64,000 nucleotides of DNA from IMGVR_UViG_3300026521_000003:124001-188000; one strand, 5' to 3'; shown: positions 2,435 through 63,547, counted from the stretch's first letter. Notes: generated by a model not told the origin, from the letters alone. Program-made: numbers and translations.

Positions 2435-5182
2435 ATGAATCATAACTTTTATTATGAAGGTCGACAAATAAAAAATTATTTAATTGGGTTTGCAAGTATA
2501 TTTTCTGAAATACCTTATAAAAATCGAAAGGGCAAATTGGAAAGTGTGCCAATTCATTATGGTTCTCCATCAGATATAATATCATATTTAGAAATGAATG
2601 TAGATAATGATGAAACTCATAATAGAAATAGATTAAAAGATATATCTGTACCTTTATTTTCATTTCGTATGACATCGATGGAGCAAAATCTAGAACGTAG
2701 AAGAGCTCCACTCGATTCTATTGCTGTAGATTTACGTCCATTAGGATATGGAACCGGGTATGTAGCTATGAAACCATCACCATTTAAATTTACTTTTGAA
2801 TTATTGTTATGGGCGAGTAGTGATTATCAGGCGTTTGAAATAGTTGAACAAATAGTACCATATTTTAATACCCCTCAACAAGTAACAATAGAGCCCCTTC
2901 CTAGATGTCCGGTTTCAACAACAGAAGTTTTTTTAGAAAGTTTAGATATTGATACTGAGCCAGACTCTCAAAAATATTCTGCATTAGTAACAATGAATTT
3001 CAATCTAAATGGATGGTTATTATCACAACCAAGAATTTGGTCAACAAATATGCAGTTTGAATTATCTATGTTGGATAAAGAGAATATTACTCAAGGGGTC
3101 GATTTAAATGACTCTGATTATTCTATTGGACATGAGATAATTGATAATAATAGTAGAAATACCAATACAAATACTCAAAAAGAAACTACTATCGAATCAT
3201 TTATAAAAAGTTCTAATTTAAATGAATTATATTCTGAGACATTAGATATGATTAAAATATTAAAAGCAGAGGGTTATATTAGTGATGATGGTCATATTTT
3301 AACAACTGATAATATTACTATTTTTTATAAGGGTAAAGAAAAAAACCTTTCTATCGAATATATAAATTGGTTAATAGATGAAAACGAAGATCTTGAATAT
3401 CTATATGATAATTTTAATATGCAAGAAAAATTATTAGCTCAAGATTTAAAAGCTGATAATTTAGTACTTGATACTATGATTTATGATAAAAGTGAAACTG
3501 TTGAAATATATTTAAAATTGCTAGATAATAATTTAGTAACAATGGGATTTAATTTAACGGATGTACAAATAACAAATTCTGAGAAATTAAATATTTTTGG
3601 TACACCTAGAATTGATATTGATGATGCATTAAATAGAATGAAGTTATATTATAGTGTACTTAGTAATTTAAAAGTAAAAAAAGAAACTATATTATCTAAT
3701 ATTGATAGTACAATTAAACCGTCATTTATTAAATTTGATTTGCCAAATGATTTTGAAATTGATGAAAGATTAAAAAAGTATGATACTAAGTTAGTTATTA
3801 ATGATATATATACGACTATTAATGATGATTTAAGTATTGATTTAACTCTTGAAACAGAATTAGATCTTAGACTTTGTTATATAGAAAATAATGAATTGGT
3901 TGAATTAGAATATGATACAAAATTTAATTTTAGTCCACCGATTGGTACTATGAATGTTTATGCTATAATATCAAATGAATCAAATTATATCTTTGGTGGT
4001 TTATTATATGATCCATCGGATAGTTTATTTTCTAATGAGAAATATTTTATTAATGGTCAAAAAGTTCCATTGGAATTAAGTAATGATATACAAAATGTAG
4101 TTAATATAGAAAAAGTATTAAATTCTTCATTTAAAGAGATAGATAAATTTATTATTGCTATATTGATATTTAATAAATTGAAAAATAATATTGATGATAT
4201 TAATGATTTAGAAAATGATCAATTATTTAAAATCGCCAGCAAAAAATACAATATTACGAAGTATGAAATTGTTGAATTTGCAAATATCTTATATTCATTG
4301 AATAAGGAATTAAGTGATAATATTGATTTGATTAGTGTTCCATCAAATTTGCCAATTTCAACCGATGAATTTAACAATAAACAAATTAATATAGCACCAG
4401 ATTTATCTATGGTATTGGCACTAGATAAAAATAATAAGCCTATATACGATGTTAATAATGACGGTTTTATAAATAAAACCGATTTAGAAATATTGGGATC
4501 TGAGGTTGATAATATTGACTCATATGATTATGAATTGAAATATGGTGTATGGTATAAACGATTTAATATTGATAATATAACAGAAGAAAAAATACTTAAA
4601 ATATCACAAAACATTAAAACAATTTATTATTTAACTGAAAAAAACGATATGACGGAATTAAAATTATATTTAGAATTAAAAGATCAGGGATTAGTATCAG
4701 AGCAATATTCTATAATTTCTACGGAAAAAAATTTAAAAAAATTAAAAGCCTTAGGTTATAATATAGAAGAATTAGAAGATAAACTTCTTTTTATGCGAAT
4801 GTTTATAGATGCAGTAAAAAATATAATGATTGATGACCGAGATTTTATATTGTATCAAGTTCCAGAAATGAATGAAGATAGTAAGTCAATGTTATATCGA
4901 ACTGAAGGTTTGGATATTGATAGTATTGTTTTAGGTAAATTTATTGAAAAATATTTTCAATTATTAGATGATTATGACCAACGTATAATGGACGACATTC
5001 TATTTAGACAATTATTATCAAAAGATATGGGTGTGTATTATAATGCTGCATATGAATTTAATCTTGTGTGGGTAGATATAGTAAAAACGGATTTTTTTAA
5101 AAATAGTTTACAAGTAAAAACTCCAAGATTGGATGAAATTTTACCATATGTAAAAGAAAAAATAGATGAAATCCTAAAATAG
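2435..5182 (+). CDS. gp15: tail terminator/sheath stabiliser (T4 gp15-like N-terminal ~200 aa) with ~700-aa C-terminal extension
   Basis: FYYEGRQIKNYLIGFASIFSEI...VPIHYG...P.PFKFTFEL...QAFEIVEQIVPYFN is gp15-like; the remainder is unassigned. Confidence 0.8.
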   Translation: MNHNFYYEGRQIKNYLIGFASIFSEIPYKNRKGKLESVPIHYGSPSDIISYLEMNVDNDETHNRNRLKDISVPLFSFRMTSMEQNLERRRAPLDSIAVDLRPLGYGTGYVAMKPSPFKFTFELLLWASSDYQAFEIVEQIVPYFNTPQQVTIEPLPRCPVSTTEVFLESLDIDTEPDSQKYSALVTMNFNLNGWLLSQPRIWSTNMQFELSMLDKENITQGVDLNDSDYSIGHEIIDNNSRNTNTNTQKETTIESFIKSSNLNELYSETLDMIKILKAEGYISDDGHILTTDNITIFYKGKEKNLSIEYINWLIDENEDLEYLYDNFNMQEKLLAQDLKADNLVLDTMIYDKSETVEIYLKLLDNNLVTMGFNLTDVQITNSEKLNIFGTPRIDIDDALNRMKLYYSVLSNLKVKKETILSNIDSTIKPSFIKFDLPNDFEIDERLKKYDTKLVINDIYTTINDDLSIDLTLETELDLRLCYIENNELVELEYDTKFNFSPPIGTMNVYAIISNESNYIFGGLLYDPSDSLFSNEKYFINGQKVPLELSNDIQNVVNIEKVLNSSFKEIDKFIIAILIFNKLKNNIDDINDLENDQLFKIASKKYNITKYEIVEFANILYSLNKELSDNIDLISVPSNLPISTDEFNNKQINIAPDLSMVLALDKNNKPIYDVNNDGFINKTDLEILGSEVDNIDSYDYELKYGVWYKRFNIDNITEEKILKISQNIKTIYYLTEKNDMTELKLYLELKDQGLVSEQYSIISTEKNLKKLKALGYNIEELEDKLLFMRMFIDAVKNIMIDDRDFILYQVPEMNEDSKSMLYRTEGLDIDSIVLGKFIEKYFQLLDDYDQRIMDDILFRQLLSKDMGVYYNAAYEFNLVWVDIVKTDFFKNSLQVKTPRLDEILPYVKEKIDEILK

Positions 5183-5211: not shown

Positions 5212-5409
5212 ATGAGAATTTCAAAATTATTTGAATCAGCACCTAGAAAGAAAGGAAAAACTACTGCTAATGATGTAAGAGTGTGGTTAGATAAAATAAA
5301 TAATGGTGAAGCTACTGAAGAAGATATACAATTATATGATGATTTAAAAAGCATATCACGAAAATTAGGTGGAAAAACAACAGTAATAGAAATACTTAAA
5401 GCGATTTAA
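5212..5409 (+). CDS. small late protein, putative head-internal protein
   Basis: AATAAATA and AGGAG upstream; leader MRISKLFE|S. Confidence 0.6.
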   Translation: MRISKLFESAPRKKGKTTANDVRVWLDKINNGEATEEDIQLYDDLKSISRKLGGKTTVIEILKAI

Positions 5410-5433
5410 TATAGGGATATTTATCCCTATATT
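5408..5433. terminator. bidirectional intrinsic terminator
   Basis: aatatagggat-attt-atccctatatt inverted repeat between convergent genes. Confidence 0.7.
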
Positions 5434-5441
5434 ATTATTTA

Positions 5442-6146
5442 TTAAAATATTTTACCTAATAAGACTCTCGATAAATCTTCAAGTTTATATAAACTTACAT
5501 CTTCAAACCAATGTATATTAACACCAGAGCCTTTTAAAAATTCTAACGATTTGAAATATGCATCTCTACGTTTATTTAAAATATCTATATCTAAAGTATC
5601 ATTAGAGTCTACTAAACCATTTTCAATATCTATTTCTGTTCTTTCAATTATTATCTCATTTGGTAAATCAAGAAATATAATATCTGTCGGCATTTTTATA
5701 AATTTATTTGTATTGAGTGCAACTTTTATAAATTCTAGATCGGTTCTACTATTATTATAAAATGCTTGGTATGCTAATGTAGATATAAAATAACGATCAA
5801 ATAGATAATTCGCCTCATCAATTATATTAGTATTTACAATTTGGTTATTGTTGTTAGTAGTTTCATTAATAAGTTTAGTATTTAAAAATAATTCATTCAT
5901 CCAATAGTGACTCATTTCGGATAAAAAATTAGGAGTGTTTACTATTGATAAATCTGGATTTGATGAATTTAATTCATTTCTAATTATAGCTCCAATAGGG
6001 GTAGATGCATTTGGGAATGAAAACCTATTTAATTTTTTCCCATTTGTTCCTTGCATTTGATTCCATACCATTTCAAACGAATCACAAAATGAGGATTTTC
6101 CAGTTTTATCAAGACCTTCAACGGCTATAATTTTATTAATTATCAT
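5442..6146 (-). CDS. tmk: thymidylate (dTMP) kinase
   Basis: P-loop AVEGLDKTGKSS, FP...TPIG..IR, DRYFISTLAYQ, P.DIIFLD. Confidence 0.9.
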   Translation of the reverse strand: MIINKIIAVEGLDKTGKSSFCDSFEMVWNQMQGTNGKKLNRFSFPNASTPIGAIIRNELNSSNPDLSIVNTPNFLSEMSHYWMNELFLNTKLINETTNNNNQIVNTNIIDEANYLFDRYFISTLAYQAFYNNSRTDLEFIKVALNTNKFIKMPTDIIFLDLPNEIIIERTEIDIENGLVDSNDTLDIDILNKRRDAYFKSLEFLKGSGVNIHWFEDVSLYKLEDLSRVLLGKIF

Positions 6147-6240
6147 AATTTAATACCTTTTTATTTTATTTATTTTTTATTTTACAATTTTGTCTAAATA
6201 AAGAATAAATAAAGATAATTAATAAAAACGGAGATTTAAA

Positions 6241-6867
6241 ATGTCTAGACTAATTAATATTCTGAATAAGAATAAAATGATAAAATTAAAAGAAGCCGAT
6301 GAAGAAGCTCCGGCTGAAAATACTGATGAATTAACTTTGGATGATACTTCAGCTGATACTAAAGATCCTGGAGCAGGTGAGGCTCCAGTTGAAGGTACGG
6401 AAGAAGTTCAAGATGATACTACTGAAGATGAAGAAACATCAACTAATGATGAAAAAGACAATATGGATGACGTTCCAACAGAAGAAAAAGATGATATGAA
6501 TACACCCACAGAAGACATTGATAAAGCCATTGAAGAAATGATAGGTATGACGGAAATTCAACATACATCTAGTTCAACGATAATTGATTTTGAGGATGGG
6601 GGACAAGTAATGTTTGTTCATCCAATGGTATCATTAAAAAGTGAAACATTGAATGAAATAATTAAATTGATTATGAAAGACATAACAAAGACTTATGCCT
6701 CAAATAAAGATGAAATAACAGGAAAAGATCTAAATAAAACGAGATATTGGAAAAGTTTGAGTACTCTTATTGAAACTATGGTTAGAAGTCAATTAACAAA
6801 AAGTGATAATATGAATGGTTTGATTGATGAAATTAAACAAGTATTTAAAGTTTTAGAAGTAAAATAA
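6241..6867 (+). CDS. acidic late protein, putative head/prohead-associated
   Basis: AATAAATA upstream, leader ending LKE|A, D/E-rich low-complexity N half. Confidence 0.55.
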   Translation: MSRLINILNKNKMIKLKEADEEAPAENTDELTLDDTSADTKDPGAGEAPVEGTEEVQDDTTEDEETSTNDEKDNMDDVPTEEKDDMNTPTEDIDKAIEEMIGMTEIQHTSSSTIIDFEDGGQVMFVHPMVSLKSETLNEIIKLIMKDITKTYASNKDEITGKDLNKTRYWKSLSTLIETMVRSQLTKSDNMNGLIDEIKQVFKVLEVK

Positions 6868-6876
6868 TAGGATATA

Positions 6877-9117
6877 ATGATGGCTCAACCTTTGATGATT
6901 CAATCAATAGTGACTGATAATAGGATAACTGCAAAATTTTCTGATAACGAATTGCCTAAATATGCAAGGCATGGGGAGTTATATGTTGTTAATGGGATAT
7001 TATACATTTATGTTGATTTAGATAATACCGGTTCAGATATTGGACAATGGTTTCCTATGACATATGAAAAAGAAATTGTTATGTATGTTGAAGCTGAAGA
7101 AAAGAATATTTGGTCATTTCCTATATCATTTTATACTCATAATATACATGTTATTGTATATGATCAAAATGACCGAGTATATACTTCTAATTTTGATTAT
7201 GTTATTAAAAATGGTATAATGACTTTAACTTTTAATGAATTAATATCAGGGAAAGTCTATATTATTATGGATAAAGGATTTGATTGGATTGATTCATCAT
7301 TAATTGTTGCTGATAGAAAATTTGCTATAACATCCGATGAAAATAATTTTTATTATATTGAAGTAAACACCGAAAATTTATCTATTGATAAAAATGGTAA
7401 AATTATTATTAAAAACGATTTATCTGTAAATGGTAATTTAGATATTAATGGTGATTTAAATATTACTGGTGATTTAAAAATAATGGGTGAAAACATTGAA
7501 ATAGAATCTTCAACATTAACTGTTGCTGATAATATAATAACCTTAAATAATGGATTCGTGGGTTCTCCTTTTCAGAATACAGGGATAGAAGTAGATCGTG
7601 GTAGTTTGGGTAAATTAAATATTTTAACATTTAATGAAACGATGGATTATGTGGAGATCCCAGTTATAGATAATGAAGGACTTATTAATCAAGAAGAAGT
7701 AGCTACTAAACCGTTTGTAAATAACTCAATAATGATTGAAACAACTAGAGCACAATCTGCTGAAATTATATTACAAACAAATATTGATAACGAAATTACA
7801 AGGGCACAATCTACTGAAAGTACATTACAAACAAATATTGATGATGAAGTAAATAGAGCACAATCTGCTGAAAGTACATTACAAACAAATATTGATAATG
7901 AAATTACAAGAGCACAATCTGCTGAAAGTACATTACAAACAAATATTGATAATGAAATTACAAGAGCACAATCTGCTGAAACTGTATTACAAACAAAAAT
8001 AGATGATGAAGTTAATAGAGCTATTATAGTAGAAGGTGATATTAATAATTTACAAACTAACTCTAAATCAAATTTGGTTTCTGCTATAAATGAAAACGTT
8101 GAAAGTATTAACATTGAAAAAGGACGTATTGATTCAATCTTATCAGCTAGTGAAGCTGATAAAGATTCATTTGCAGAGATAGTAACGTTGATAAATTCGG
8201 TTGATATTGAAAATGATAATGTTTTCGCTAATTATGTTTTAGTTAATGATGAACGTAGTGCTAATATTGAACAAGCAATATTAGATGAAACTACTAGAGC
8301 ACAATCTACCGAAAGTACATTACAAACAAATATTGATAACGAAGTAAATAGAGCAACTGCAGTTGAGGATAACTTAAATATATTGGTTTCTGATTTATCA
8401 GCAAATCTAGAAACAAATTTTCTCAACAAGTCAACATCAGTCGAACAGATTATAAATCCTAATTTAAAATTAGATGGTTCAATACTGACATGGTCCTTAT
8501 CAACAGAATGGTTTTATTATTCTATAAATGAAAATTTGACTACTATTAACATTAATAGTAGTACAAATATAAACGAATATGTTTATACTATGGATGCTAT
8601 TGAGACTATTAAATTTAATAAAACAGGTCAGATATGGTCATCATTATATGGTAATTTAGAAGATTATTTTTTAGGTATTAATGATCAGTCTAAAGACAGT
8701 TTATTAATTAATGGTTTAAGCGATACACAATTTGTAAGAAGTGACATAGATTATACTATGAATGCAAATTATCATATATTAAAAGATTTAACCGTAGATG
8801 GTACACTTACAGCCGGAACAATAATTGAAACTTCATCTATTAAATATAAAGAAAATGTAAAATTGATAAAATCACCATTAGAAATTGTATCTAAATTAGA
8901 TGGAGTTCGATACGTATGGAAAGATACAAAAAAAGATGATATTGGTTTTATTGCTGAAGATGTTAATTTAGTACTTCCTGAGTTAGTTCAAATTAACGAT
9001 GGAGAAATTGAAGGAATGAATTATTCAAAAATAACTGCTGTTTTAGTTGAGGCTATAAAAGAACAACAAAAACAAATTACAGAATTAATGAATGAGGTAA
9101 AAAAATTAAAAGGATAA
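6877..9117 (+). CDS. tail fibre protein with C-terminal intramolecular chaperone (peptidase S74-type)
   Basis: 18-aa coiled-coil repeats; C-terminal ETSSIKYKENV...LDGVRYVWK...IGFIAEDV..VLPELV...MNYSKITAVLVEAIKEQ. Confidence 0.85.
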   Translation: MMAQPLMIQSIVTDNRITAKFSDNELPKYARHGELYVVNGILYIYVDLDNTGSDIGQWFPMTYEKEIVMYVEAEEKNIWSFPISFYTHNIHVIVYDQNDRVYTSNFDYVIKNGIMTLTFNELISGKVYIIMDKGFDWIDSSLIVADRKFAITSDENNFYYIEVNTENLSIDKNGKIIIKNDLSVNGNLDINGDLNITGDLKIMGENIEIESSTLTVADNIITLNNGFVGSPFQNTGIEVDRGSLGKLNILTFNETMDYVEIPVIDNEGLINQEEVATKPFVNNSIMIETTRAQSAEIILQTNIDNEITRAQSTESTLQTNIDDEVNRAQSAESTLQTNIDNEITRAQSAESTLQTNIDNEITRAQSAETVLQTKIDDEVNRAIIVEGDINNLQTNSKSNLVSAINENVESINIEKGRIDSILSASEADKDSFAEIVTLINSVDIENDNVFANYVLVNDERSANIEQAILDETTRAQSTESTLQTNIDNEVNRATAVEDNLNILVSDLSANLETNFLNKSTSVEQIINPNLKLDGSILTWSLSTEWFYYSINENLTTININSSTNINEYVYTMDAIETIKFNKTGQIWSSLYGNLEDYFLGINDQSKDSLLINGLSDTQFVRSDIDYTMNANYHILKDLTVDGTLTAGTIIETSSIKYKENVKLIKSPLEIVSKLDGVRYVWKDTKKDDIGFIAEDVNLVLPELVQINDGEIEGMNYSKITAVLVEAIKEQQKQITELMNEVKKLKG
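7735..8020 (+). repeat. 54-bp tandem repeat encoding E(I/V)(T/N)RAQS(A/T)ESTLQTNID(N/D)
   Basis: About 5 consecutive near-identical units, with a further copy near 8285-8360. Confidence 0.9.
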
Positions 9118-9120
9118 TAA

Positions 9121-10131
9121 ATGTTTTCGTTACCTATATACCCAGATCTTGAACCAACGTATATTAGAGAAGAATTTATCCCTTTTTTGAAAAAATATAA
9201 ATCAATAATATATGATTTATATTTTACAGTACGTATACCTCCTTTTGAACAAGATGCAATGGGTACCATATTTAGTAAAGAAGATATACCATCATTAATT
9301 TCTAATGCTTTAATTATTCAAAATGAAACAAAAATACCTATTTCAGCTGTATTCAATAATATTTTTATATCTCCATCGGAGAAAAATTTAGATATTTTTA
9401 TTAAACATTTTACACCACTATATAATTTTGGGGTCAGATCAATAACAATTCCTTTTACATCATGGCTTATGTTTGATAAATTGCAGAATTCTTTCCCTGA
9501 ATTATATATAAAAAATACAGTTTTACAAAGTGTATCCGAACCAAGAGAAGTTTACAATCTAGCGATAAATGGATTTGATTATATTAATTTAGACCGAAAT
9601 TTATTACGTAATCAAAATAAACTTAAAATTATAGATAAAGCTAGAAAAGCTGCAGAATCAAAATTAGGAAAGCCTATCAAACTTAGTATTTTATTTAATG
9701 AGAACTGTATAGGTAATTGTCCTATACAGAACGAACATTATTTATATAATTCTCATAATAATATTAATAACCAACCATATACTTTTTTTAAATCATCTAT
9801 GAGTAAAATTAGTTGTCTTGAATGGGAAAAGAAATCTCCAGAGTTACTATTAAAAAAAGCATCAGTTATAAATGATGAGAAATTTATGAATGGTTTAGAT
9901 ATGATTGATGTATTTAAACTACATGGTCGTGAATCTAAAAATGTTTTTTTAAATAGTTTAAATATAATTAAGTCTACATATGATAAAACTGAAATAATAG
10001 ATGAATTATATTACACTCGTATTAAATATAATATAAAAGATATTGATTATAATCTATGGGTAGAAAAAGTAAAAAATTGTAACTTTGATTGTTGGGATTG
10101 TACTTATTGTGAGGATTTATTTAAAAAATAA
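9121..10131 (+). CDS. U32-family (peptidase-like/Fe-S hydroxylase-like) protein
   Basis: GFDYINLDRNL, NENCIGNCP, FKLHGRE and C-terminal CNFDCWDCTYC. Confidence 0.75.
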   Translation: MFSLPIYPDLEPTYIREEFIPFLKKYKSIIYDLYFTVRIPPFEQDAMGTIFSKEDIPSLISNALIIQNETKIPISAVFNNIFISPSEKNLDIFIKHFTPLYNFGVRSITIPFTSWLMFDKLQNSFPELYIKNTVLQSVSEPREVYNLAINGFDYINLDRNLLRNQNKLKIIDKARKAAESKLGKPIKLSILFNENCIGNCPIQNEHYLYNSHNNINNQPYTFFKSSMSKISCLEWEKKSPELLLKKASVINDEKFMNGLDMIDVFKLHGRESKNVFLNSLNIIKSTYDKTEIIDELYYTRIKYNIKDIDYNLWVEKVKNCNFDCWDCTYCEDLFKK

Positions 10132-10132
10132 T

Positions 10133-10759
10133 ATGAATATAGAATCAATCCATACTATTAGTAATAAAAATATACTTCCTAATACTATATATCAAATAGA
10201 AGGACTAACCAGTTTTAAAACCCAAAATATATTGGCTGAATTAGCAAGAAACAAGAATGTATTAGAAATAGGTAGTTTATATGGTGCAACTACTCTAGCA
10301 TTAGCATATTATGCAAAAGAAATTACAACCGTAGATAATTGGTCTGATACTGAAATTTTACCAATAAAAAACAATATTAAAATAAAAAAAAATGTAATAA
10401 ATAAGACATATGATATATTTAAAAATAATACAAAATCTGTTGATAATATTAATTTGATTATTGGTAATATTTTTTCAAAAACTGTTTGGTCTAAATTAAG
10501 ATTAAGAAAATTTGAGTTGATATTTTATGATGGACCACATGCGGTCAAAGATATTATACAGTTTATAAACTTATATGCGTTTTTATTTAAGAAAGATACT
10601 ATATTAATTTTTGATGATTATAATTTTGATACGGTTCAAGAGGGATTAAAATATGGGTTTGAATCTATAAATATAGAAATAGATAAAACAATTAAAATAG
10701 AAACTGAAGGTGAAAGTAAAGATGAAATATGGAATGGTATTGCGATTTTCCAATTTTAA
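10133..10759 (+). CDS. class I SAM-dependent methyltransferase (Methyltransf_24-like)
   Basis: VLEIGSLYGATT, TTVDNW, ELIFYDGPH, ILIFDDY; start moved to ATG 10133 just after the upstream stop. Confidence 0.85.
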   Translation: MNIESIHTISNKNILPNTIYQIEGLTSFKTQNILAELARNKNVLEIGSLYGATTLALAYYAKEITTVDNWSDTEILPIKNNIKIKKNVINKTYDIFKNNTKSVDNINLIIGNIFSKTVWSKLRLRKFELIFYDGPHAVKDIIQFINLYAFLFKKDTILIFDDYNFDTVQEGLKYGFESINIEIDKTIKIETEGESKDEIWNGIAIFQF

Positions 10760-10770
10760 AAGGGGTTTAG

Positions 10771-11841
10771 ATGGCTGATTTGATAAACATAGAAACTGTT
10801 GATGGTCAAGAAGTAATTGATTCTAATGCTCAAGTTAATTATGATGCAATATCTAATATCCCTCCATCTTTAGTTGATACTAGTACTCATAATCATGATA
10901 ATGAATACATGAGTAAGAATACTATTGAAGATGAATTTACACGTATAATGAATAAAGTAGCATCTTTAACAAAGGCATTAACCATTAGACCTTTAAAAAC
11001 GAAAGGTTTTTTAAACGGTGGTTATAAAAGTGGTTATGTTTATGCACAAAGAGTCCAACGGTTTAATACTGTTACTGAAACTGGAGTTGAAATTGGACAA
11101 ATAGGTACAGTTGCATCGTATTATACACCTGGTGCTTCATCGGAATTGAAAGGTTATTATTTTGGTGATGCTAATAGTAGTACAACTGCTGGAGATCATT
11201 CTAGAACTGGAAGAGATTTAGATAAAATTACATATTTAACTGAGGTAGAAGAATATGTAGGAAATATAACATTACATAATACAAAATCAACAATTTATAA
11301 TATATATTCGCAATCTAAAATATTTTTATCGAATGATGGAGCTGGATGGTCTAAATTATCTGTTATAACGGATACCATTGATAGTGTTTCATCAACACTT
11401 AATGGGTATGGAATGGGTAGACAAGGGTTATCTTCAGAAACGTTTGGATATGTGGTTCAAATAGGTAATTATGAAAGAACTTCATTAAAATTTGATTATT
11501 TAACAAATATAACAGATATAGGTACCACACAACAGATTAGACAACAACCTGCTGGACTTTCAAAAGATAAAGATAAAGGATATTGGATTGATTATGGTAC
11601 TGCTAATAATTGGCGAGTAGATATGTTAAATAATAGTGTGTCCAATATTGTCTGTTTTACAGAGGGATTTGGTGAAAGTAATGCGTTAGGGTCTGAGAAA
11701 GAAGGATTTATGATGGGTGGTTATGATGGTGCGCAGCACGGGAAGGTTCAAAAAATGGTATGGGAAACAGAGACTGCTAGTAATGTATTAGGTGGATCAT
11801 TAGCAATACCACAATCATCAGCTGGAATGGCAGAATCATAA
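10771..11841 (+). CDS. virion fibre/receptor-binding protein with HxH module and kelch-like beta-propeller
   Basis: HNHDNEY motif, short coiled coil, then blades such as KGFLNGGY, KGYYFGD, FGYVVQ, KGYWID and EGFMMGGY. Confidence 0.65.
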   Translation: MADLINIETVDGQEVIDSNAQVNYDAISNIPPSLVDTSTHNHDNEYMSKNTIEDEFTRIMNKVASLTKALTIRPLKTKGFLNGGYKSGYVYAQRVQRFNTVTETGVEIGQIGTVASYYTPGASSELKGYYFGDANSSTTAGDHSRTGRDLDKITYLTEVEEYVGNITLHNTKSTIYNIYSQSKIFLSNDGAGWSKLSVITDTIDSVSSTLNGYGMGRQGLSSETFGYVVQIGNYERTSLKFDYLTNITDIGTTQQIRQQPAGLSKDKDKGYWIDYGTANNWRVDMLNNSVSNIVCFTEGFGESNALGSEKEGFMMGGYDGAQHGKVQKMVWETETASNVLGGSLAIPQSSAGMAES

Positions 11842-11852
11842 GGTAATAAATA

Positions 11853-12839
11853 ATGGCAAAATTAAATCAACTTAAAGTAGATAATAATAATATATTTGAT
11901 ATTAACAATAGGATAGATTGGACAAGATTTAAAAATACACCATCGACATTAGTAAGTGCTTCGGGACATAATCATGATGATTTGTATTACAAATCATCAG
12001 TAGTTAATGATAAATTTAAATTGGAAGAGGATAAGATTGATTTGCTTGAAAAACGTATTGAAGTATTATCCTATAAAACAGATATAATGATGGCGGGTGG
12101 ATTTTTAAATGATACTAAAATTCATAACTATAATTTTTCAACTGAAGTAACTAATGAAATATCTACAAATACTAATATGATAAGTATTAATACACCTGGT
12201 ATTTCATCAAAAGAATTTGGTTATTTTACTAATAAAGATAAAATGATTGATAAATTTTATCATTTTACATTGGTAATTGAATCAATCCTGCAATCAAATA
12301 TTGAACCAAAAGCATCATTAATAGATTTTGCTGTTCAAAGTTTAGGATTTATTACGGATGGTATTGGGTGGAATAAACTCAATCAATTACTAGATATATG
12401 GGAAACTAAAAATGATAATCCAGTTGATGTGTCTGGACGTACATTTTTATCATCTAGTGTTACTGGATATTGTAAAGGATCGGATCTAGGTATGGTAAAA
12501 GAATTAACATATACAACGGAAGTATTAAAAGAATTATCAGAGATAAGAACAATCGGAATAACAACAGGACTTAATAAAAGTTCAAATTTAGGATATTGGA
12601 TTTCAAAGATAAACGGTAATTATGAACATAATTATCTAACAGAAAGCTTTAGATCGATAAATATTTTTATAGATGATATGGATAATTCATCAACCTCAAC
12701 AACTGAATTTTTTGGTATGATTGTAGCAGGAGGAATAGATGGTAATTTAACTAATAAATTGATGTGGTCTACTCTTTCAATTACGCAATCTATATCTCTT
12801 TCTTTAAATAAGAGTGGAGCTAGTTCAATAGAACTATAA
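11853..12839 (+). CDS. paralogue of the 10771 propeller fibre protein
   Basis: Shared N-terminal module (IDW..FKNTPSTLV..SGHNHDDLYY) and degenerate G(Y/F) blades. Confidence 0.6.
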   Translation: MAKLNQLKVDNNNIFDINNRIDWTRFKNTPSTLVSASGHNHDDLYYKSSVVNDKFKLEEDKIDLLEKRIEVLSYKTDIMMAGGFLNDTKIHNYNFSTEVTNEISTNTNMISINTPGISSKEFGYFTNKDKMIDKFYHFTLVIESILQSNIEPKASLIDFAVQSLGFITDGIGWNKLNQLLDIWETKNDNPVDVSGRTFLSSSVTGYCKGSDLGMVKELTYTTEVLKELSEIRTIGITTGLNKSSNLGYWISKINGNYEHNYLTESFRSINIFIDDMDNSSTSTTEFFGMIVAGGIDGNLTNKLMWSTLSITQSISLSLNKSGASSIEL

Positions 12840-12856
12840 TAAAACTGGAGAATATA

Positions 12857-13078
12857 ATGGATGTATTAAAACTAGAAATTAATAAACAAACGATATTGGA
12901 TGAAGCTAATAATATAGACTGGAGTAAGGTAAAAAACACACCTTCGATAATTATTACTAGTAATACTCATACTCATGATGATAGATATTATCGTCAAAGT
13001 GATGTTGATAGTAGAATAAATTCACTAAGTCTAGCTATAGCAGATTTAGAAGAAAAAATAAATAACTTAGGAGTATAA
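12857..13078 (+). CDS. headless mini-paralogue of the 10771/11853 N-terminal module
   Basis: IDWSKVKNTPSIIITSNTHTHDDRYY followed only by a coiled coil. Confidence 0.65.
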   Translation: MDVLKLEINKQTILDEANNIDWSKVKNTPSIIITSNTHTHDDRYYRQSDVDSRINSLSLAIADLEEKINNLGV

Positions 13079-13080
13079 AC

Positions 13081-13767
13081 ATGATAGTTCCAGAAATAGA
13101 TTACCCAATAATTAATAATATTAAAGATAAAAAAATTGTAATATATACGGCTAATAAAGTGGGTGAATTTCCACATAATTTTACCAAATCATTTATCCCT
13201 AGTAGTATTCCTATAAAATTAGATTGGTATGTTGGGTACACAAATATTATGTTGGATGATTTTAATATGATAGAAATACCATTAGATATTGCTAGGGGTT
13301 TACAATCGTTTAATATTATTAACCATTCAAAAAAAAGATATGATCAATATAATAGACCAAATCCGAATAATGAAAAAAAAGAAATAATTATGACTGAAGA
13401 TGAGATATATCTACAAGTAAAAGCTAAAAAATTTCTAATAGAGAAAGAAATTATCCGTATTTTTAATAAAAAAATTGATAGTTTATACAATCAATACGGA
13501 CGAGAATCTGATTCATGGGAGATACAATATTCAGAAGCTATTGAATACAAAAATGGAAATAATGACACCCCATTTATAGATATTTTATCTTCAAAACGAA
13601 ATATTAGTAAAGAATTATTAATTGAAAAAATTATTGCAAAAAATAAAGAATTTAAACAAAAATTTGCTAAAATTATTGCCGAAAAACATACGCTTGAAGA
13701 TAAATTGAAAAATATGAATACAGATACATTACTAAATTTATTTATTGATGAAAATATTGTAAAATAA
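13081..13767 (+). CDS. putative tail-fibre assembly/chaperone-like protein
   Basis: ESDSWEIQYSEAIEY...TPFIDILSSKRNISKELLIEKII resembles the E..SW..Q..EA...TP.L..LA..R motif of fibre-associated phage proteins. Confidence 0.55.
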   Translation: MIVPEIDYPIINNIKDKKIVIYTANKVGEFPHNFTKSFIPSSIPIKLDWYVGYTNIMLDDFNMIEIPLDIARGLQSFNIINHSKKRYDQYNRPNPNNEKKEIIMTEDEIYLQVKAKKFLIEKEIIRIFNKKIDSLYNQYGRESDSWEIQYSEAIEYKNGNNDTPFIDILSSKRNISKELLIEKIIAKNKEFKQKFAKIIAEKHTLEDKLKNMNTDTLLNLFIDENIVK

Positions 13768-13793
13768 TTTAAAAATTATGAGGTAATATATCT

Positions 13794-14477
13794 ATGTCTA
13801 AATATCAAAATGAAATCAAAGAACTTATTGACATGCAGCCCACAACAATGTCCAAATATCAAATTGATAATTTTGTTATTAATGAAAAAATGACAGACTA
13901 TAAGATTCTAAAACAAATATTATTAGAATTAGGAACTCGATATAATGCTTATGAAGATATACTGATAGATTGTGAAATTTTAGAATTGGAAATAAAAAAA
14001 TCTGAAAAAGAATATATCGAAATTAAAGATGATATAACTAAAAAAATTAAAAAATTAGAAATTCAGAAACAAAAAAATAATTTAAGACGTATGAAAAAAA
14101 CTATAAAAAATCATGAATATGAAATTGCTATTTTTGAAGAAAATTATAAAAAAATTAAAGATAATTATGAATCACCAAAATTACTTTTGCAAGATGAAAC
14201 TGGAGAAGAAATATATTGGGTTAATAAGTTTATAAAAGAAGCTCAAATTGATATAATGACTAGTGGACGTATTGGTAAAGGTGTCTTAGACGCTATTCTT
14301 ATGCTTCCAGAAAAATTACAAGAAATAATAGTAAATAATGCAATTGCTCAAGCTGCCAATTCTAATTCATATATAGGTTTCAATGAAACAGAAATTATTG
14401 AAGGTATTAAATCTTCTAAAAAAGTTTCGTTGATGTTGAATACCTTAATAGGTGAGAAAAAAGATAAGGTGGATTAA
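13794..14477 (+). CDS. conserved phage coiled-coil protein
   Basis: 227-aa ORF, MSKYQIDNFV...KQILLEL...YWV.KF.KEAQIDIM..GRIG.G.LD; last gene of the fibre cassette. Confidence 0.55.
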   Translation: MSKYQNEIKELIDMQPTTMSKYQIDNFVINEKMTDYKILKQILLELGTRYNAYEDILIDCEILELEIKKSEKEYIEIKDDITKKIKKLEIQKQKNNLRRMKKTIKNHEYEIAIFEENYKKIKDNYESPKLLLQDETGEEIYWVNKFIKEAQIDIMTSGRIGKGVLDAILMLPEKLQEIIVNNAIAQAANSNSYIGFNETEIIEGIKSSKKVSLMLNTLIGEKKDKVD

Positions 14478-15223
14478 TGGGTTTTGATTTTAATAATTCA
14501 TCTGGAGAATCATTTGGTAATATAGAAGATGTTTTTTTTAAAAAAGACGGAAAATCTATTATAGATTCTACATCTTCTAATAATTCAGAAAAGATTAATT
14601 TGAATGAACTAAAACAATCTATTCATGAAAAAAGTATGCAACATCATAATAATGCTTCTGGGACAACAATAACGATTTCTAAGGAAATTTTAGATTTAGA
14701 TGAAGATAAAATTATTCAATTATCGCCATTAGAAGAACGTAGGATGAATATTTCGTCAGTACGTAATAAATCGTTTATTAATATAAATGATGGTTCGGAA
14801 ATTACTATTATTGAAAAAACACAAATGTATAATGGTGTAAATTTATATACTGCTAAACAAGAAAATGGTGAAATGATAACATATCCTCGTAGTATGTTTG
14901 TTGGTTCTACAAAGCAATTTGTACCAAAAGAATTTTATATTCGTGAAGCTGAAAGGGTTTTGGAGGATACAATAGTAAAACACTATAATAATATTAAAGT
15001 TTTATTAGAAAAACAAGAATTATTAGAAGAAACCCCTGATAGTAAATATTTAGAACTAATGTTGTCGGAACCATTATCAATAGGCTCTATGGTTGTACCC
15101 GATAAAGTTCAAATTCCCGTTAAAAGGATTTTTGATATGGAATACAAAATAATGTTTTTAGAGAATGTTATTTGTTTAGATAATAAAATAGCATCATTAT
15201 TGTTTATTGATATTTGGTTCTAA
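14477..15223 (+). CDS. hypothetical protein
   Basis: 248-aa ORF with TAATG translational coupling to the upstream gene. Confidence 0.6.
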   Translation: MGFDFNNSSGESFGNIEDVFFKKDGKSIIDSTSSNNSEKINLNELKQSIHEKSMQHHNNASGTTITISKEILDLDEDKIIQLSPLEERRMNISSVRNKSFININDGSEITIIEKTQMYNGVNLYTAKQENGEMITYPRSMFVGSTKQFVPKEFYIREAERVLEDTIVKHYNNIKVLLEKQELLEETPDSKYLELMLSEPLSIGSMVVPDKVQIPVKRIFDMEYKIMFLENVICLDNKIASLLFIDIWF

Positions 15224-15704: not shown

Positions 15705-15713
15705 TCAAAAAAA

Positions 15714-15721
15714 TGTAAAAT
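15714..15721 (+). promoter_or_regulatory. TGTAAAAT promoter-like motif (pre-replicative class)
   Basis: TGTA(A/T)AAT precedes ten non-structural transcription units (see findings). Confidence 0.6.
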
Positions 15722-15752
15722 AACTAAAAATATAATATAAGGATAAAAAATA

Positions 15753-17558
15753 ATGGGTATGACACAAGAACAAGAAGAATTTTCTAAAACACGAGACACC
15801 CATATATTGGCATTAGCATCAGCTGGAGCAGGAAAAACTCATACTTTAATCCATTTTATTCATGATAAAATTAAAAGTGGATTACGTCCAAATCAAATAA
15901 TTTCATTTTCATTTACTCGTAAAGCTGCAAATGAATTGAAAGATAGAGTTAATAGTCATTTTAAAGGTATGGATTTTGATTTTAAATATATATCAACTAT
16001 ACATTCATTTTGTTGGAATGAAATTATTAAACCATTTTATAATGAAATTGGTTATTCATCAATACCAACCATTGTACATGAATTTCCAGATGAATTTATG
16101 GAAAAAGAATACAAAGAACATGGTAAAAAACAAGATAGAGCTGGATTTAATCGAAAATTTATGGATGTAGTTTCTAAAGATTTACAAGAAGAAGATTTTA
16201 CGGCTCCAGAGACAGTACGATTATTACAATATCTTGTCGGTCATAATTTAACTATGTTTGATTTTATGATTCATTTAGCTAATTTTGTATTAAAAGAAGA
16301 GCCAGGTAAAGTACAAAAACATATAGGTACAATAGGATATGTTATAACTGATGAAGCACAAGATTTAAATCCGGCACAATATAAATTTACCAAGTTATTG
16401 CAGTCAGTTTTTAGTAATGAAAATAATAGTGTAAATCTAGTAAAAGTTGGCGATTTTAAACAATCAATATATGGTTTTAGAGGCAGTGATCCTAGAATAA
16501 TAAATACTTTTGTTGATGAATTTAATCCTGTTGTTAAAATATTATCTTATAATTTTAGGAGTGCTCCAGAAATTGTAGATTTAGCTAATGAAATTGCTGA
16601 AACTATTGATTTAGGAAATGATGCACTTAATGAATCAAAATATGCACAACATGGGTCTAGTATATCTGAAGGAGAAGTATATAATATATATGATGTTGAA
16701 GAATTTATTGATGAGCTGAAATTAATTGAAAAACCATTAGAACAAACTTGTATTTTAGCTAGAACTAATATGGTTATAAAATCATTAGCTAAGATTTTAG
16801 GAAAATTAGAAATACCGTATTATCTACATACTGAATTTGATATATTAAAGAGATCAGAAGTAAAATTTTTAATGAGTATGTTGAGTATTGTAAGTCATGG
16901 GTATAATAAAGCTATAGTTTTAGATATTATTAAAGCTGCAAAAGGTGGGATACCTATGAAAGTTGCTGCTTCAATTAATAAATGTGATAATATGCAAATG
17001 GTTGGAAGAATGTTTCAAGATATTAAAAAGATACCAGAAATTATAAAAATTTACAATGATTTAGAAAAAGGAGCATTTAATGCGGCAATACCTAAAATAG
17101 CAAAGCTTATGGAAAATTCAAAAAAATCATCTGAACAAATACAACAGTCTTTAGAACGTTTTTATCGTGACCTAAATACTGTTAAAACAACTGAAGGACT
17201 AGATTCTTGGATGGAAGCATTAGAAGAATTATTATTTGAAGCTCAATTTTTAGAAGAAAAACAGCAAGGGAAAGTACAGTTAATGACGGTTCATAAAAGT
17301 AAAGGGTTGCAATGGGATAATGTTATTTTTATTTATGATTTCAGTTTATTAGAACAGGTAGAAAATGATTTTTATGATTTGGAAGAAGAGAAACGTGTAG
17401 TATATACAGCTGTAACTAGACCAACAACCAATTTAGTTATATGGGATTTAGAACAACAGATGATTAGTAGCTATTTTACAAAAGGGTCATTATTAAAAAT
17501 GATTGAAAATGCTCTAAAAAAAGGTATTTTAGATATAGAGGATTTTTCAAAATATTAA
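15753..17558 (+). CDS. uvrD: UvrD/Rep/PcrA superfamily-1 DNA helicase
   Basis: ASAGAGKT, FTRKAANEL, STIHSF, DEAQD, VGDFKQSIYGFRG, NFRS, MTVHKSKGLQWD, VYTAVTR. Confidence 0.95.
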   Translation: MGMTQEQEEFSKTRDTHILALASAGAGKTHTLIHFIHDKIKSGLRPNQIISFSFTRKAANELKDRVNSHFKGMDFDFKYISTIHSFCWNEIIKPFYNEIGYSSIPTIVHEFPDEFMEKEYKEHGKKQDRAGFNRKFMDVVSKDLQEEDFTAPETVRLLQYLVGHNLTMFDFMIHLANFVLKEEPGKVQKHIGTIGYVITDEAQDLNPAQYKFTKLLQSVFSNENNSVNLVKVGDFKQSIYGFRGSDPRIINTFVDEFNPVVKILSYNFRSAPEIVDLANEIAETIDLGNDALNESKYAQHGSSISEGEVYNIYDVEEFIDELKLIEKPLEQTCILARTNMVIKSLAKILGKLEIPYYLHTEFDILKRSEVKFLMSMLSIVSHGYNKAIVLDIIKAAKGGIPMKVAASINKCDNMQMVGRMFQDIKKIPEIIKIYNDLEKGAFNAAIPKIAKLMENSKKSSEQIQQSLERFYRDLNTVKTTEGLDSWMEALEELLFEAQFLEEKQQGKVQLMTVHKSKGLQWDNVIFIYDFSLLEQVENDFYDLEEEKRVVYTAVTRPTTNLVIWDLEQQMISSYFTKGSLLKMIENALKKGILDIEDFSKY

Positions 17559-18471: not shown

Positions 18472-18543
18472 AGGACCCCCTTATAAATTTATATTATTTA
18501 TATAAAAAATGTAAAATATACTAAAATCTTATAAAGGTGAAAT

Positions 18544-52695: not shown

Positions 52696-52789
52696 AACAT
52701 CTCCAATTTATATAGTATATTTATAGATTTAAAAATAATTTTTCTAAAAAATGTAAAATAGTATATAATAAATGATATAAGGAAAATGA

Positions 52790-63487: not shown

Positions 63488-63547
63488 TTAGTTATTTACT
63501 TATTTATTCAGTAAAATGTAAAATATTTGTATAAAGGGGAAAATCAT

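What the first reader, a model, noticed from the sequence alone, without database searches (positions are those of the whole stretch)
6877..14477. U32-family enzyme + SAM methyltransferase embedded in a tail-fibre operon: candidate virion-modification cassette
Seen: the genes run fibre(S74) - U32-like (ENCIGNC, FKLHGR, terminal CxxxCxxCxxC) - methyltransferase - two propeller fibres - mini fibre - chaperone-like - coiled coil. Gaps are under 30 nt and I saw no internal terminator. Known: characterised U32 proteins (RlhA, TrhP, UbiU/V) are Fe-S, O2-independent hydroxylation factors rather than proteases, and hydroxylation is often followed by SAM-dependent methylation. Aerobic T4-like phages often place 2OG-Fe(II) oxygenases near fibre genes. 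Inference: a hydroxylate-then-methylate pathway acting on fibre proteins or their glycans, suited to a microaerobic host.
Basis: partly seen in the sequence, partly recalled or inferred. Interest (0 to 1): 0.72.

Follow-up and report, generated by a model that had tools for sequence, protein, structure and literature searches.

The report
U32-like enzyme module in phage fibres
A divergent iron-sulfur "U32" enzyme and an O-methyltransferase sit in a tail-fibre operon of a deep-sea jumbo phage. With a Kelch-propeller fibre and two unknown proteins they form a module repeated in hundreds of marine phage contigs, which most likely tailors the fibre, though the target is unproven.

Summary
Genes 6877-14477 are a tightly packed + strand unit: S74 fibre, a 336-aa Cys-rich TIM barrel, a SAM O-methyltransferase, two Kelch-propeller fibres, a mini fibre and two helical proteins.

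The 336-aa protein gets no Pfam U32 hit. Its model is closest to U32 structures (Mk0906 Z 15.8, MJ1657 TM 0.73), and profile comparison with canonical U32 gives 95.5% probability. It belongs to an undescribed U32 branch with the signature Cx3C..C..KxxGR..Cx3Cx2Cx2C.

The methyltransferase profile hits one solved structure: TrmR/YrrM, the O-methyltransferase that follows U32 hydroxylases in mo5U synthesis. In most relatives the two enzymes are one fused protein.

The main new result is the unit. In 80 of 80 viral loci the enzyme lies with p228 and p227 homologues, usually behind a Kelch-head fibre gene. This is cyanophage T4-GC 351-354, and whole modules are sometimes duplicated. In P-HM2 the four genes are late genes.

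The hydroxylate-then-methylate idea and the link to fibres are supported. The fibre as substrate is inferred only. The microaerobic rationale does not generalise, because most carriers are cyanophages.

The parts
6203..6212 (+). Late-promoter-like motif GAATAAATAA about 30 nt upstream of the first gene of the unit
   Evidence: The same R-W-ATAAATAA motif lies upstream of other + strand genes (22982, 29594, 45031, 39009, 21758). There are 22 matches against 14.3 expected. Inferred, not shown.
6241..6867 (+). g208, an acidic protein of unknown function and the first gene of the packed unit
   Evidence: ORF list, translation. No Pfam, PHROG or NCBIfam hit.
6877..9117 (+). Tail fibre with an 18-residue repeat coiled-coil shaft and a C-terminal S74 intramolecular chaperone domain
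   Evidence: Pfam Peptidase_S74 E 7.7e-11. Many PHROG tail-fibre families match.
9121..10131 (+). Divergent U32-superfamily TIM-barrel enzyme with seven invariant cysteines; presumed Fe-S hydroxylase
   Evidence: AF2 pLDDT 93.7. 5d88 Z 15.8 against about 11.9 for other barrels. MJ1657 TM 0.73. hhalign against canonical U32 gives 95.5% probability. Invariant residues.
10133..10759 (+). SAM-dependent, probably cation-dependent O-methyltransferase (Methyltransf_24, TrmR/COMT-like)
   Evidence: Pfam E 1e-9. The profile hits only 5zw3 YrrM/TrmR in the PDB, E 3.3e-5. It is fused to the U32-like domain in cyanophages.
10771..11841 (+). Fibre with N-terminal adaptor, coiled coil and a six-bladed Kelch propeller head (p356)
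   Evidence: AF2 model plus Foldseek against Keap1/KLHL12. Homologue of cyanophage T4-GC351 and of RP12 ORF142.
11853..12839 (+). Paralogous Kelch-head fibre (p328)
   Evidence: 26% identical to p356 with the same architecture.
12857..13078 (+). Mini fibre (p73): the shared N-terminal adaptor plus a coiled coil only
   Evidence: Translation. Matches the N-terminal part of the Kelch-fibre profile, E 9.7e-15.
13081..13767 (+). p228, an unknown helical protein (phrog_1604; cyanophage T4-GC352) that always accompanies the enzyme
13794..14477 (+). p227, an unknown acidic coiled-coil protein (phrog_1409; cyanophage T4-GC353); in most phages it lies directly upstream of the U32 gene
14477..15223 (+). 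p248, the last gene of the packed run; not conserved with the module in relatives
   Evidence: ORF list. Absent from the relative's module.

Best explanation
The two enzymes belong to a conserved, late-expressed module of phage adsorption-apparatus genes. The module comprises one or more fibres with a Kelch-propeller head, two acidic helical proteins (p228, p227), a divergent U32-superfamily Fe-S enzyme and a cation-dependent SAM O-methyltransferase.

The enzyme pair most likely performs two successive steps on one substrate. The first is an O2-independent U32-type hydroxylation of an sp2/aromatic carbon. The second is O-methylation of the new hydroxyl group. The most likely substrate is a protein of the module itself, namely the Kelch-head fibre, which would be modified in the cytoplasm before or during assembly. 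p228 and p227 would act as accessory or adaptor factors.

Shown here: the gene order, the fold and profile relationships, the fusion of the two enzymes, the universal co-occurrence, and late transcription of the P-HM2 orthologues.

Inferred: Fe-S binding, the hydroxylase chemistry, the order of the two steps, and above all the identity of the substrate.
For: 1. U32 relationship.
- Mk0906 is the top solved fold, about four Z units above generic TIM barrels.
- MJ1657, TrhP2, PrtC, TrhP and UbiU lead the Swiss-Prot models.
- Named U32 clusters match in AFDB.
- hhalign gives 95.5% probability, E 1.4e-8. It pairs the C196 motif with the U32 GAMC motif and KLHGRE with KIEGR.
- The A1 profile also hits a weak PF01136 protein.

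2. Enzyme pairing.
- The U32-like and methyltransferase domains are one polypeptide in about 70 of 80 viral loci and in cyanophage isolates.
- The methyltransferase profile has a single significant PDB hit, TrmR/YrrM. The aligned residues are FYD133 and DD161-162.
- In B. subtilis, TrmR sits in an operon with the U32 proteins TrhP1 and TrhP2 (PMC6599085).

3. Module.
- All 80 viral loci carry p228 and/or p227 next to the enzyme: 74 show both, and 6 start inside p227.
- A Kelch-fibre homologue usually precedes them: about 30 of 64 upstream ORFs at E below 0.01, with lengths clustered near 390 and 465 aa.
- Among isolates, p227 is found in the same 77 Synechococcus, 38 Cyanophage and 8 Prochlorococcus records as the enzyme.
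- A 57%-identical relative keeps the whole block with different flanking genes.
- RP12/RP31, which are PhiKZ-like, carry Kelch-like, p228-like, p227 and U32 genes in a row.
- Complete modules occur twice in tandem on L030, with a second set also seen on L067 and L037. The enzyme copies are 52% identical and the p227 copies 34-37%. Such duplication makes sense for cognate sets but not for a housekeeping tRNA or DNA enzyme.

4. Timing.
- PHM2_098 is Late(E) and PHM2_099-101 are Late(D), like the tail fibre PHM2_096. Replication and nucleotide genes are Mid (PMC5082946 supplement).
- In the window, the unit is preceded by a late-like motif, whereas the next unit has a different promoter motif.

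5. A distant family member again lies in a T4-like fibre cluster, next to an S74 fibre, a Trp-halogenase-like gene and 2OG-oxygenase-like genes.

6. One cellular member lies between an RTX-repeat protein and a C39-peptidase ABC exporter, which is a typical position for a protein-modifying enzyme.

7. The enzyme, methyltransferase and p227 are acidic, with median pI 5.7, 4.8 and 4.9. This is weak evidence against nucleic-acid binding.
Against: - No modification has been observed on any protein.
- Every characterised U32 enzyme acts on RNA or on a quinone, never on a protein.
- The closest characterised U32 plus O-methyltransferase pair (TrhP/TrmR) modifies tRNA.
- Synteny shows co-inheritance, not a shared substrate. 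Fibre regions of T4-like phages are known hot spots for accessory genes.
- Other cellular members lie next to molybdenum hydroxylase subunits, or are paired with a canonical U32 gene. These contexts point to small-molecule or RNA substrates.
- The RP31 virion proteome detected the genes flanking the module but none of its products, including the Kelch-like protein.
- RP12 has no recognisable methyltransferase next to the enzyme.
Confidence: 0.4

Rival explanations
1. Nucleic-acid modification. The pair is a phage version of TrhP + TrmR. It would hydroxylate C5 of a pyrimidine in host tRNA (U34) or rRNA, or in phage DNA or a nucleotide precursor, and then O-methylate it to give mo5U or an analogue. 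Its place among fibre genes would be incidental.
For: Two of the three characterised U32 systems hydroxylate RNA pyrimidines. The only known operon that joins U32 genes with a COMT-like O-methyltransferase is yrrM-yrrN-yrrO, which makes mo5U34. TrmR is the only significant PDB hit of the methyltransferase profile. JGI names the fused proteins 'predicted O-methyltransferase YrrM'. TrhP2 is the second-best Swiss-Prot structural match. A dCTP deaminase gene lies near the enzyme in RP12 and on L006, and a thymidylate-kinase-like gene lies just upstream in the window.
Against: The P-HM2 orthologues are late, not middle like the replication and nucleotide genes. The enzyme is obligately linked to p228, p227 and a Kelch fibre, and whole divergent modules are duplicated in tandem. 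The U32 C-terminal domain found in TrhP/RlhA is absent. The genome has no tRNA genes. The proteins are acidic. The thymidylate-kinase-like gene is on the other strand behind a different promoter motif.
Confidence: 0.18
2. Small-molecule tailoring. The pair hydroxylates and O-methylates an aromatic metabolite, such as a quinone-, catechol- or heterocycle-type compound. This would resemble UbiU/UbiV followed by UbiG. The product might be used or bound by the module's other proteins.
For: UbiU/UbiV are U32 proteins that hydroxylate an aromatic ring, and O-methylation follows in the same pathway (established knowledge). COMT-type methyltransferases typically act on catechol-like small molecules. 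Several cellular family members lie next to xanthine-dehydrogenase-type molybdenum hydroxylase and FAD subunits. The Smithella member lies among sulfotransferase, ATP-grasp, GNAT and PAPS genes. In RP12 the next gene resembles an anion transporter, DUF401/CitMHS.
Against: No other biosynthetic gene lies in the phage modules. Expression is late and the genes are embedded among structural genes. No lipid-binding UbiT-like or chorismate/prephenate gene was found.
Confidence: 0.15
3. The U32-like protein is a protease (the family was named after the PrtC collagenase) or a non-catalytic assembly factor that processes or folds the fibres.
For: This is the historical annotation of U32 as a collagenase. 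PrtC is among the structural matches. The gene is adjacent to fibres that need maturation.
Against: Seven invariant cysteines, the fusion to a SAM methyltransferase and the U32 motifs now linked to Fe-S hydroxylation argue for redox chemistry. The S74 fibre already carries its own self-cleaving chaperone.
Confidence: 0.05

Closest known systems
Bacillus subtilis trmR(yrrM)-trhP2(yrrN)-trhP1(yrrO) operon (mo5U34 synthesis in tRNA)
   Same: It combines U32-superfamily protein(s) with a COMT-like SAM O-methyltransferase encoded side by side. The logic is hydroxylation followed by O-methylation. TrmR is the only solved structure that the phage methyltransferase profile finds.
   Different: The phage enzyme is outside PF01136 and lacks the U32 C-terminal domain. 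It has a Cx3C motif instead of Cx6C, and an extra C-terminal Cx3Cx2Cx2C. It is single-copy and often fused to the methyltransferase. It is always linked to a Kelch fibre, p228 and p227, and it is expressed late.
UbiU/UbiV (with UbiT and the UbiG O-methyltransferase), O2-independent ubiquinone hydroxylation
   Same: A U32 fold, cysteine ligands for a 4Fe-4S cluster, and aromatic hydroxylation followed by O-methylation. UbiU is among the structural matches.
   Different: No heterodimer partner or lipid-binding protein lies in the phage module. The methyltransferase is of a different family. The context is structural genes.
Methanocaldococcus jannaschii MJ1657 (uncharacterised U32-family protein)
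   Same: It is the best structural match over the whole length: TM 0.73, 20% identity, residues 1-336 against 1-326.
   Different: Its function is unknown and it is cellular. Its sequence could not be fetched here, so its cysteine motifs could not be compared.
Cyanophage gene clusters T4-GC 351-354 (Sullivan et al. 2010), e.g. PSSM4_032-035, PHM2_098-101, S-RIM2 SWTG_00014-17
   Same: These are direct homologues of the Kelch-head fibre, p228, p227 and the U32 + methyltransferase pair, in a fibre region.
   Different: There the order is fibre > p228 > p227 > fused enzyme. In the window the two enzymes are separate genes placed ahead of the fibres and behind an S74 fibre. All are annotated only as hypothetical or 'sericin-like'.
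2OG-Fe(II) oxygenases of T4-like cyanophage fibre regions
   Same: They are oxidative tailoring-type enzymes encoded among fibre genes.
   Different: The fold is unrelated and the chemistry needs O2. They coexist with the U32 module in cyanophages, so the U32 module does not simply replace them. No PF13640 match was found in the window's genome.

Membership tests
Peptidase U32 superfamily (RlhA, TrhP, UbiU/UbiV, Mk0906) | Match to Pfam PF01136 above its cut-off | tested here: not met
   No Pfam hit for the protein. No PF01136 match anywhere in the 290-kb genome at E up to 1. Distant family members also have none.
Peptidase U32 superfamily (RlhA, TrhP, UbiU/UbiV, Mk0906) | TIM-barrel fold of the Mk0906 type | tested here: met
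   5d88 is the top Foldseek PDB hit. VIA-align Z 15.8, rmsd 3.3 over 222 of 247 residues, against about 11.9 for the next barrels.
Peptidase U32 superfamily (RlhA, TrhP, UbiU/UbiV, Mk0906) | Profile-level homology to canonical members | tested here: met
   hhalign of A1 against six PF01136 proteins gives 95.5% probability, E 1.4e-8, over 191 columns. The A1 profile also hits a weak PF01136 protein at E 2.3e-6.
Peptidase U32 superfamily (RlhA, TrhP, UbiU/UbiV, Mk0906) | Signature E-x-F-x2-G-[SA]-x-C-x4-G-x-C (PROSITE pattern recalled from memory) and the K-I-E-G-R motif | tested here: inconclusive
   The phage family has N-E-x-C-x-G-x-C. The two Cys are three residues apart, not six, and the essential Glu position aligns with Ser189. 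K-[LM]-H-G-R does align with KIEGR.
Peptidase U32 superfamily (RlhA, TrhP, UbiU/UbiV, Mk0906) | Four Cys ligating a 4Fe-4S cluster; prephenate-dependent hydroxylation | not testable with these tools
   Seven invariant Cys are present. Model coordinates, metal content and activity were not available.
TrhP/RlhA-type RNA hydroxylases | U32 C-terminal beta-barrel domain (PF16325) | tested here: not met
   No hit. The C-terminus is helical with a Cys4 motif. Canonical neighbours in L142 and L143 do carry the domain.
Cation-dependent COMT/TrmR-like O-methyltransferases | Class I SAM-binding domain | tested here: met
   Methyltransf_24 at E 1e-9, found in 17 of 21 family members. The glycine-rich motif and the acidic residue D68 are invariant.
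Cation-dependent COMT/TrmR-like O-methyltransferases | Sequence relation to TrmR and a metal-binding D / D-N triad | tested here: met
   The only significant PDB hit is 5zw3 YrrM (E 3.3e-5). Invariant D133 and D161-D162 (with N164) align with the FID and DN of TrmR. The match is weak and covers the C-terminal half only.
Kelch beta-propeller | Six four-stranded blades | tested here: met
   Model pLDDT 79, about 24 strands. TM by target is about 0.8 to Keap1/KLHL12 Kelch domains. No Kelch Pfam hit by sequence.
Peptidase_S74 intramolecular chaperone fibres | C-terminal S74 domain | tested here: met
   PF13884 at E 7.7e-11, 42.6 bits against a cut-off of 22.
Cyanophage T4-GC 351-354 module | Homologues of all four clusters lying together | tested here: met
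   tblastn and HMM matches for the Kelch fibre, p228, p227 and the U32 + methyltransferase pair.

The most novel reading that the evidence does not exclude
The U32-like enzyme is the first U32-type, O2-independent hydroxylase that acts on a protein. It would hydroxylate an aromatic residue of the Kelch receptor-binding head (for example Tyr to a catechol), and the fused COMT-like domain would then O-methylate the product. This would be a new kind of virion post-translational modification. It would tune host recognition in abundant ocean cyanophages and in vent phages, with p228 and p227 as substrate-delivery factors.
Probability: 0.2. Interest if true: 0.85.

Novelty: new variant of a known kind. 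Interest (0 to 1): 0.64.

Why it matters
U32 proteins have only recently been recognised as Fe-S, oxygen-independent hydroxylation factors, and only three substrates are known (23S rRNA, tRNA and ubiquinone precursors). This work identifies an undescribed branch of the superfamily with its own cysteine signature. It also shows that the branch is fixed in a four-to-five-gene module of fibre genes carried by at least 577 IMG/VR stretches, by 123 cyanophage isolate records and by PhiKZ-like Ralstonia phages.

All of these genes are currently annotated as hypothetical. If the module modifies a receptor-binding protein, it would add a new chemistry to phage host recognition and give U32 enzymes their first protein substrate. 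If it acts on RNA or DNA instead, it would be a phage-encoded mo5U-type pathway.

Either outcome can be tested directly in cultured systems such as P-HM2 on MED4 or S-RIM2 on WH7803.

Tried and rejected
- Megablast of the region against isolate phages found nothing.
- Sequence searches of the U32-like protein and its profile against the PDB found nothing. The p227 profile against the PDB gave only chance coiled-coil hits.
- Pfam, PHROG annotation and NCBIfam gave no function for the U32-like protein, p227, p228, g208 or p248.
- The ESM Atlas feature search for p227 gave no usable hit.
- Complex prediction of the U32-like protein with p227 gave no verdict (score 0.00, controls not run). It counts neither for nor against binding. 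It was sent again without those rows.
- One contig look-up failed for lack of a free slot.
- T4's late-promoter octamer TATAAATA is not enriched in the window (34 matches against 32 expected). A looser motif upstream of several genes is only mildly enriched.
- A one-mismatch copy of the AAATGTAAAATA motif lies at 8853, inside the fibre gene. I considered it as an internal promoter for the enzymes and set it aside, because it is 257 nt from the start codon and such near-matches are expected by chance.
- No RNA sequencing run was listed for the enzyme genes, so co-transcription in this phage could not be checked.
- No chorismate mutase, radical SAM or 2OG-oxygenase family match was found in the genome.
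- I considered a programmed frameshift joining the U32 and methyltransferase genes, because they are fused elsewhere. I rejected it: the U32 gene ends at a TAA and a new ATG follows one base later, in a different frame.
- DNA N-methyltransferase (a weak PHROG label) was rejected, because the domain aligns with O-methyltransferases and their metal-binding residues.

Full report
**Setting**

The window is bases 124001-188000 of a 289,880-bp IMG/VR virus record with no end repeats, estimated 87% complete. GC content is about 26%. Near-identical DNA is held by hydrothermal-vent and epibiont metagenome runs. Upstream of the finding lie T4-type neck genes: a gp13-like gene and a 915-aa protein whose first 247 residues match the tail sheath stabiliser gp15.

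**Checking the observation**

The ORF list gives a + strand run:
- 6241-6867 (g208)
- 6877-9117 (746 aa)
- 9121-10131 (336 aa)
- 10133-10759 (208 aa)
- 10771-11841 (356 aa)
- 11853-12839 (328 aa)
- 12857-13078 (73 aa)
- 13081-13767 (228 aa)
- 13794-14477 (227 aa)
- 14477-15223 (248 aa)

All gaps are at most 26 nt. Only weak hairpins inside genes resemble terminators. The methyltransferase starts at the ATG at 10133, one base after the TAA of the preceding gene.

The 746-aa protein has an 18-residue repeat shaft and a Peptidase_S74 domain.

The 356-aa protein folds into a short adaptor, a coiled-coil helix and a six-bladed Kelch propeller. The 328-aa protein is a paralogue. The 73-aa protein is the adaptor plus coiled coil alone.

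**Is the 336-aa protein U32-like?**

By Pfam it is not. It has no hit, PF01136 finds nothing in the whole genome, and distant relatives have no hit either.

By structure and profile it is:
- An alignment of 42 homologues (A1) gave a model with pLDDT 93.7 and a beta/alpha barrel pattern.
- The best solved match is the U32 protein Mk0906. Foldseek ranks it first. VIA-align gives Z 15.8 against about 11.9 for methylenetetrahydrofolate reductase and other barrels.
- Among Swiss-Prot models, MJ1657 matches over the full length (TM 0.73, E 1.3e-13). TrhP2, PrtC, TrhP, MJ0090, TrhP1 and UbiU follow.
- AFDB clusters named 'Peptidase U32' also match.
- hhalign of A1 against six canonical PF01136 proteins taken from MAGs gave 95.5% probability, E 1.4e-8. 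It aligned the N-E-x-C196 stretch with the G-A-M-C motif and K-L-H-G-R-E with K-I-E-G-R.

The family signature survives at 24-30% identity. It reads C196-x3-C200, H206, C232, D263-x2-K266-x2-G-R270 and C320-x3-C324-x2-C327-x2-C330. Cellular members share it.

It differs from canonical U32 in three ways. The spacing between the two motif cysteines is shorter. The Glu that is essential in TrhP aligns with a Ser. The C-terminal Cys4 motif is an addition. I therefore file it as a new branch of the U32 superfamily, not as a member of PF01136.

**The methyltransferase**

It matches Methyltransf_24. A profile of 21 family members (A2) searched against all PDB sequences gave one significant hit, 5zw3/5zw4 'putative O-methyltransferase YrrM' (E 3.3e-5). 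The invariant residues F-Y-D133 and D161-D162 lie opposite the metal-binding residues of that enzyme.

YrrM is TrmR, which methylates ho5U34 to mo5U34. Its gene shares an operon with the U32 genes yrrN and yrrO (TrhP2 and TrhP1), according to PMC6599085.

phrog_1458 spans both window genes. In cyanophages and most metagenomic relatives the two domains form one protein of 540-590 aa. The two enzymes therefore almost certainly act on one substrate, and hydroxylation followed by O-methylation is the natural reading.

**The real unit**

tblastn of the window's proteins against fetched loci showed that p227 has a homologue directly upstream of the enzyme gene in S-RIM2, P-SSM3, RP12 and two MAG contigs. 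It also showed that p228 and the Kelch protein recur.

In all 80 loci fetched, the enzyme lies with p228 and/or p227: 74 loci show both and 6 start inside p227. The order is nearly always p228 > p227 > fused enzyme. The gene before p228 is usually a Kelch-fibre homologue of about 390 or 465 aa with a fibre-type N-terminus.

The window's own clade has a different order: S74 fibre > U32 > methyltransferase > Kelch fibres > p228 > p227 (L023 and L025). A 57%-identical relative keeps this block between different flanking genes.

Among isolates, the enzyme is found in 126 records and p227 in 123. The taxon counts are the same for both, apart from three Ralstonia phages.

These genes are T4-GC 351-354 of Sullivan et al. 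2010, annotated 'sericin-like' or hypothetical.

L030 carries two complete, divergent modules in tandem, and parts of a second set are seen on L067 and L037. The enzyme copies are 52% identical and the p227 copies 34-37%.

A distant 432-aa member lies in another T4-like fibre cluster. Its neighbours include an 1801-aa S74 fibre, Gly_rich_2 proteins, a Trp-halogenase-like gene, 2OG-oxygenase-like genes, ferritin and gp13/gp14.

**Timing**

In the P-HM2 infection transcriptome (PMC5082946, supplementary file 3), PHM2_098 is Late(E) and PHM2_099-101 are Late(D). The tail fibre PHM2_096 is Late(E). g41, mazG and denV are Mid(C).

In the window, GAATAAATAA lies about 30 nt before g208, and the same motif precedes several other genes. 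An exact AAATGTAAAATA precedes the helicase gene at 15753 and three other genes. A one-mismatch copy of it faces the oppositely oriented thymidylate-kinase-like gene. This fits one late transcription unit from about 6200 to 15223, but it remains inference.

**What bears on the substrate**

For a protein of the module:
- the obligate linkage of the genes
- the duplication of cognate sets
- late expression
- the repeated placement among fibre genes in three unrelated phage groups (RP12 and RP31 are PhiKZ-like)
- a Desulfocapsa homologue lying between an RTX-repeat protein and a C39-peptidase ABC exporter
- acidic proteins

Against it, or in favour of the rivals:
- the TrhP/TrmR precedent is a tRNA pathway
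- other cellular members are paired with a canonical U32 + U32_C gene (L142, L143) or lie beside molybdenum hydroxylase subunits (L138-L141)
- the Smithella member lies in a sulfotransferase / ATP-grasp / GNAT / PAPS cluster
- RP12 has a transporter-like gene instead of a methyltransferase next to the enzyme
- the RP31 virion proteome detected the flanking ORF133 and ORF140 but none of ORF135-139

The genome has no tRNA gene. It also has no chorismate mutase, radical SAM or PF13640 match. Complex prediction for the enzyme with p227 gave no verdict.

**Verdict**

Two corrections are needed. First, the unit is the Kelch fibre, p228, p227 and the enzyme pair, not the S74 fibre operon as such. Second, the oxygen argument does not explain a family carried mainly by cyanophages, which also keep 2OG oxygenase genes alongside it.

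The substrate remains open. My estimates are about 0.4 for a module protein, 0.18 for a nucleic acid and 0.15 for a small molecule.

No paper in the searchable library links U32 to cyanophages or jumbo phages.

Noticed in passing
window 15711-15722, 18507-18518, 52749-52760, 63514-63525 (+); 6178-6189 (-): An exact AAATGTAAAATA lies 13-42 nt upstream of four + strand genes, including the helicase at 15753. A one-mismatch copy faces the minus-strand thymidylate-kinase-like gene. This is probably an early or middle promoter class, distinct from the ATAAATAA motif found before structural genes.
   Followed up: partly
window 5407-5434: A 12-bp-stem hairpin followed by a T-rich tail lies between the gp15-like gene block and the convergent thymidylate-kinase-like gene (5442-6146, minus strand). 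It looks like a bidirectional terminator that closes the neck-gene unit.
   Followed up: no
window 2435-5182: A 915-aa protein in which only the first 247 residues match the tail sheath stabiliser gp15. The remaining 670 or so residues are unexplained.
   Followed up: no
window 35829-38132: A 767-aa protein gives a very strong match to an ATP-dependent protease family (phrog_4871, E 1.6e-232). Such a gene is uncommon in phages.
   Followed up: no
G000, whole record: No tRNA or tmRNA gene was found in 290 kb of a jumbo phage with 26% GC.
   Followed up: yes
L011 (P-SSM3) 6968-8308 and 8293-8688: The fused U32 + methyltransferase gene of Prochlorococcus phage P-SSM3 is split by a frameshift within the methyltransferase part. 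It is left unannotated in the record. It may be a natural loss-of-function variant, or a sequencing error.
   Followed up: partly
L020 4794-6437 and 10852-11289: A T4-like metagenomic phage carries a Trp-halogenase-like flavoprotein gene and a ferritin gene inside its tail-fibre cluster, next to the distant U32-like member and 2OG-oxygenase-like genes.
   Followed up: no
L142 6532-8873; L143 6385-8846: In two Desulfobacterota genomes, a member of this Pfam-negative U32 branch follows a canonical Peptidase_U32 + U32_C gene: abutting it in L142, about 100 nt downstream in L143. This suggests heterodimers of the TrhP1/TrhP2 or UbiU/UbiV kind.
   Followed up: partly
L138-L141: Other cellular members of the branch lie next to the large subunit and the FAD subunit of xanthine-dehydrogenase-type molybdenum hydroxylases.
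   Followed up: partly
window 10771-13078: All three fibre proteins share an N-terminal H-x-H-D-x-x-Y motif. It resembles the metal-binding HxH motifs of T4 fibres. Whether it binds iron was not examined.
   Followed up: no
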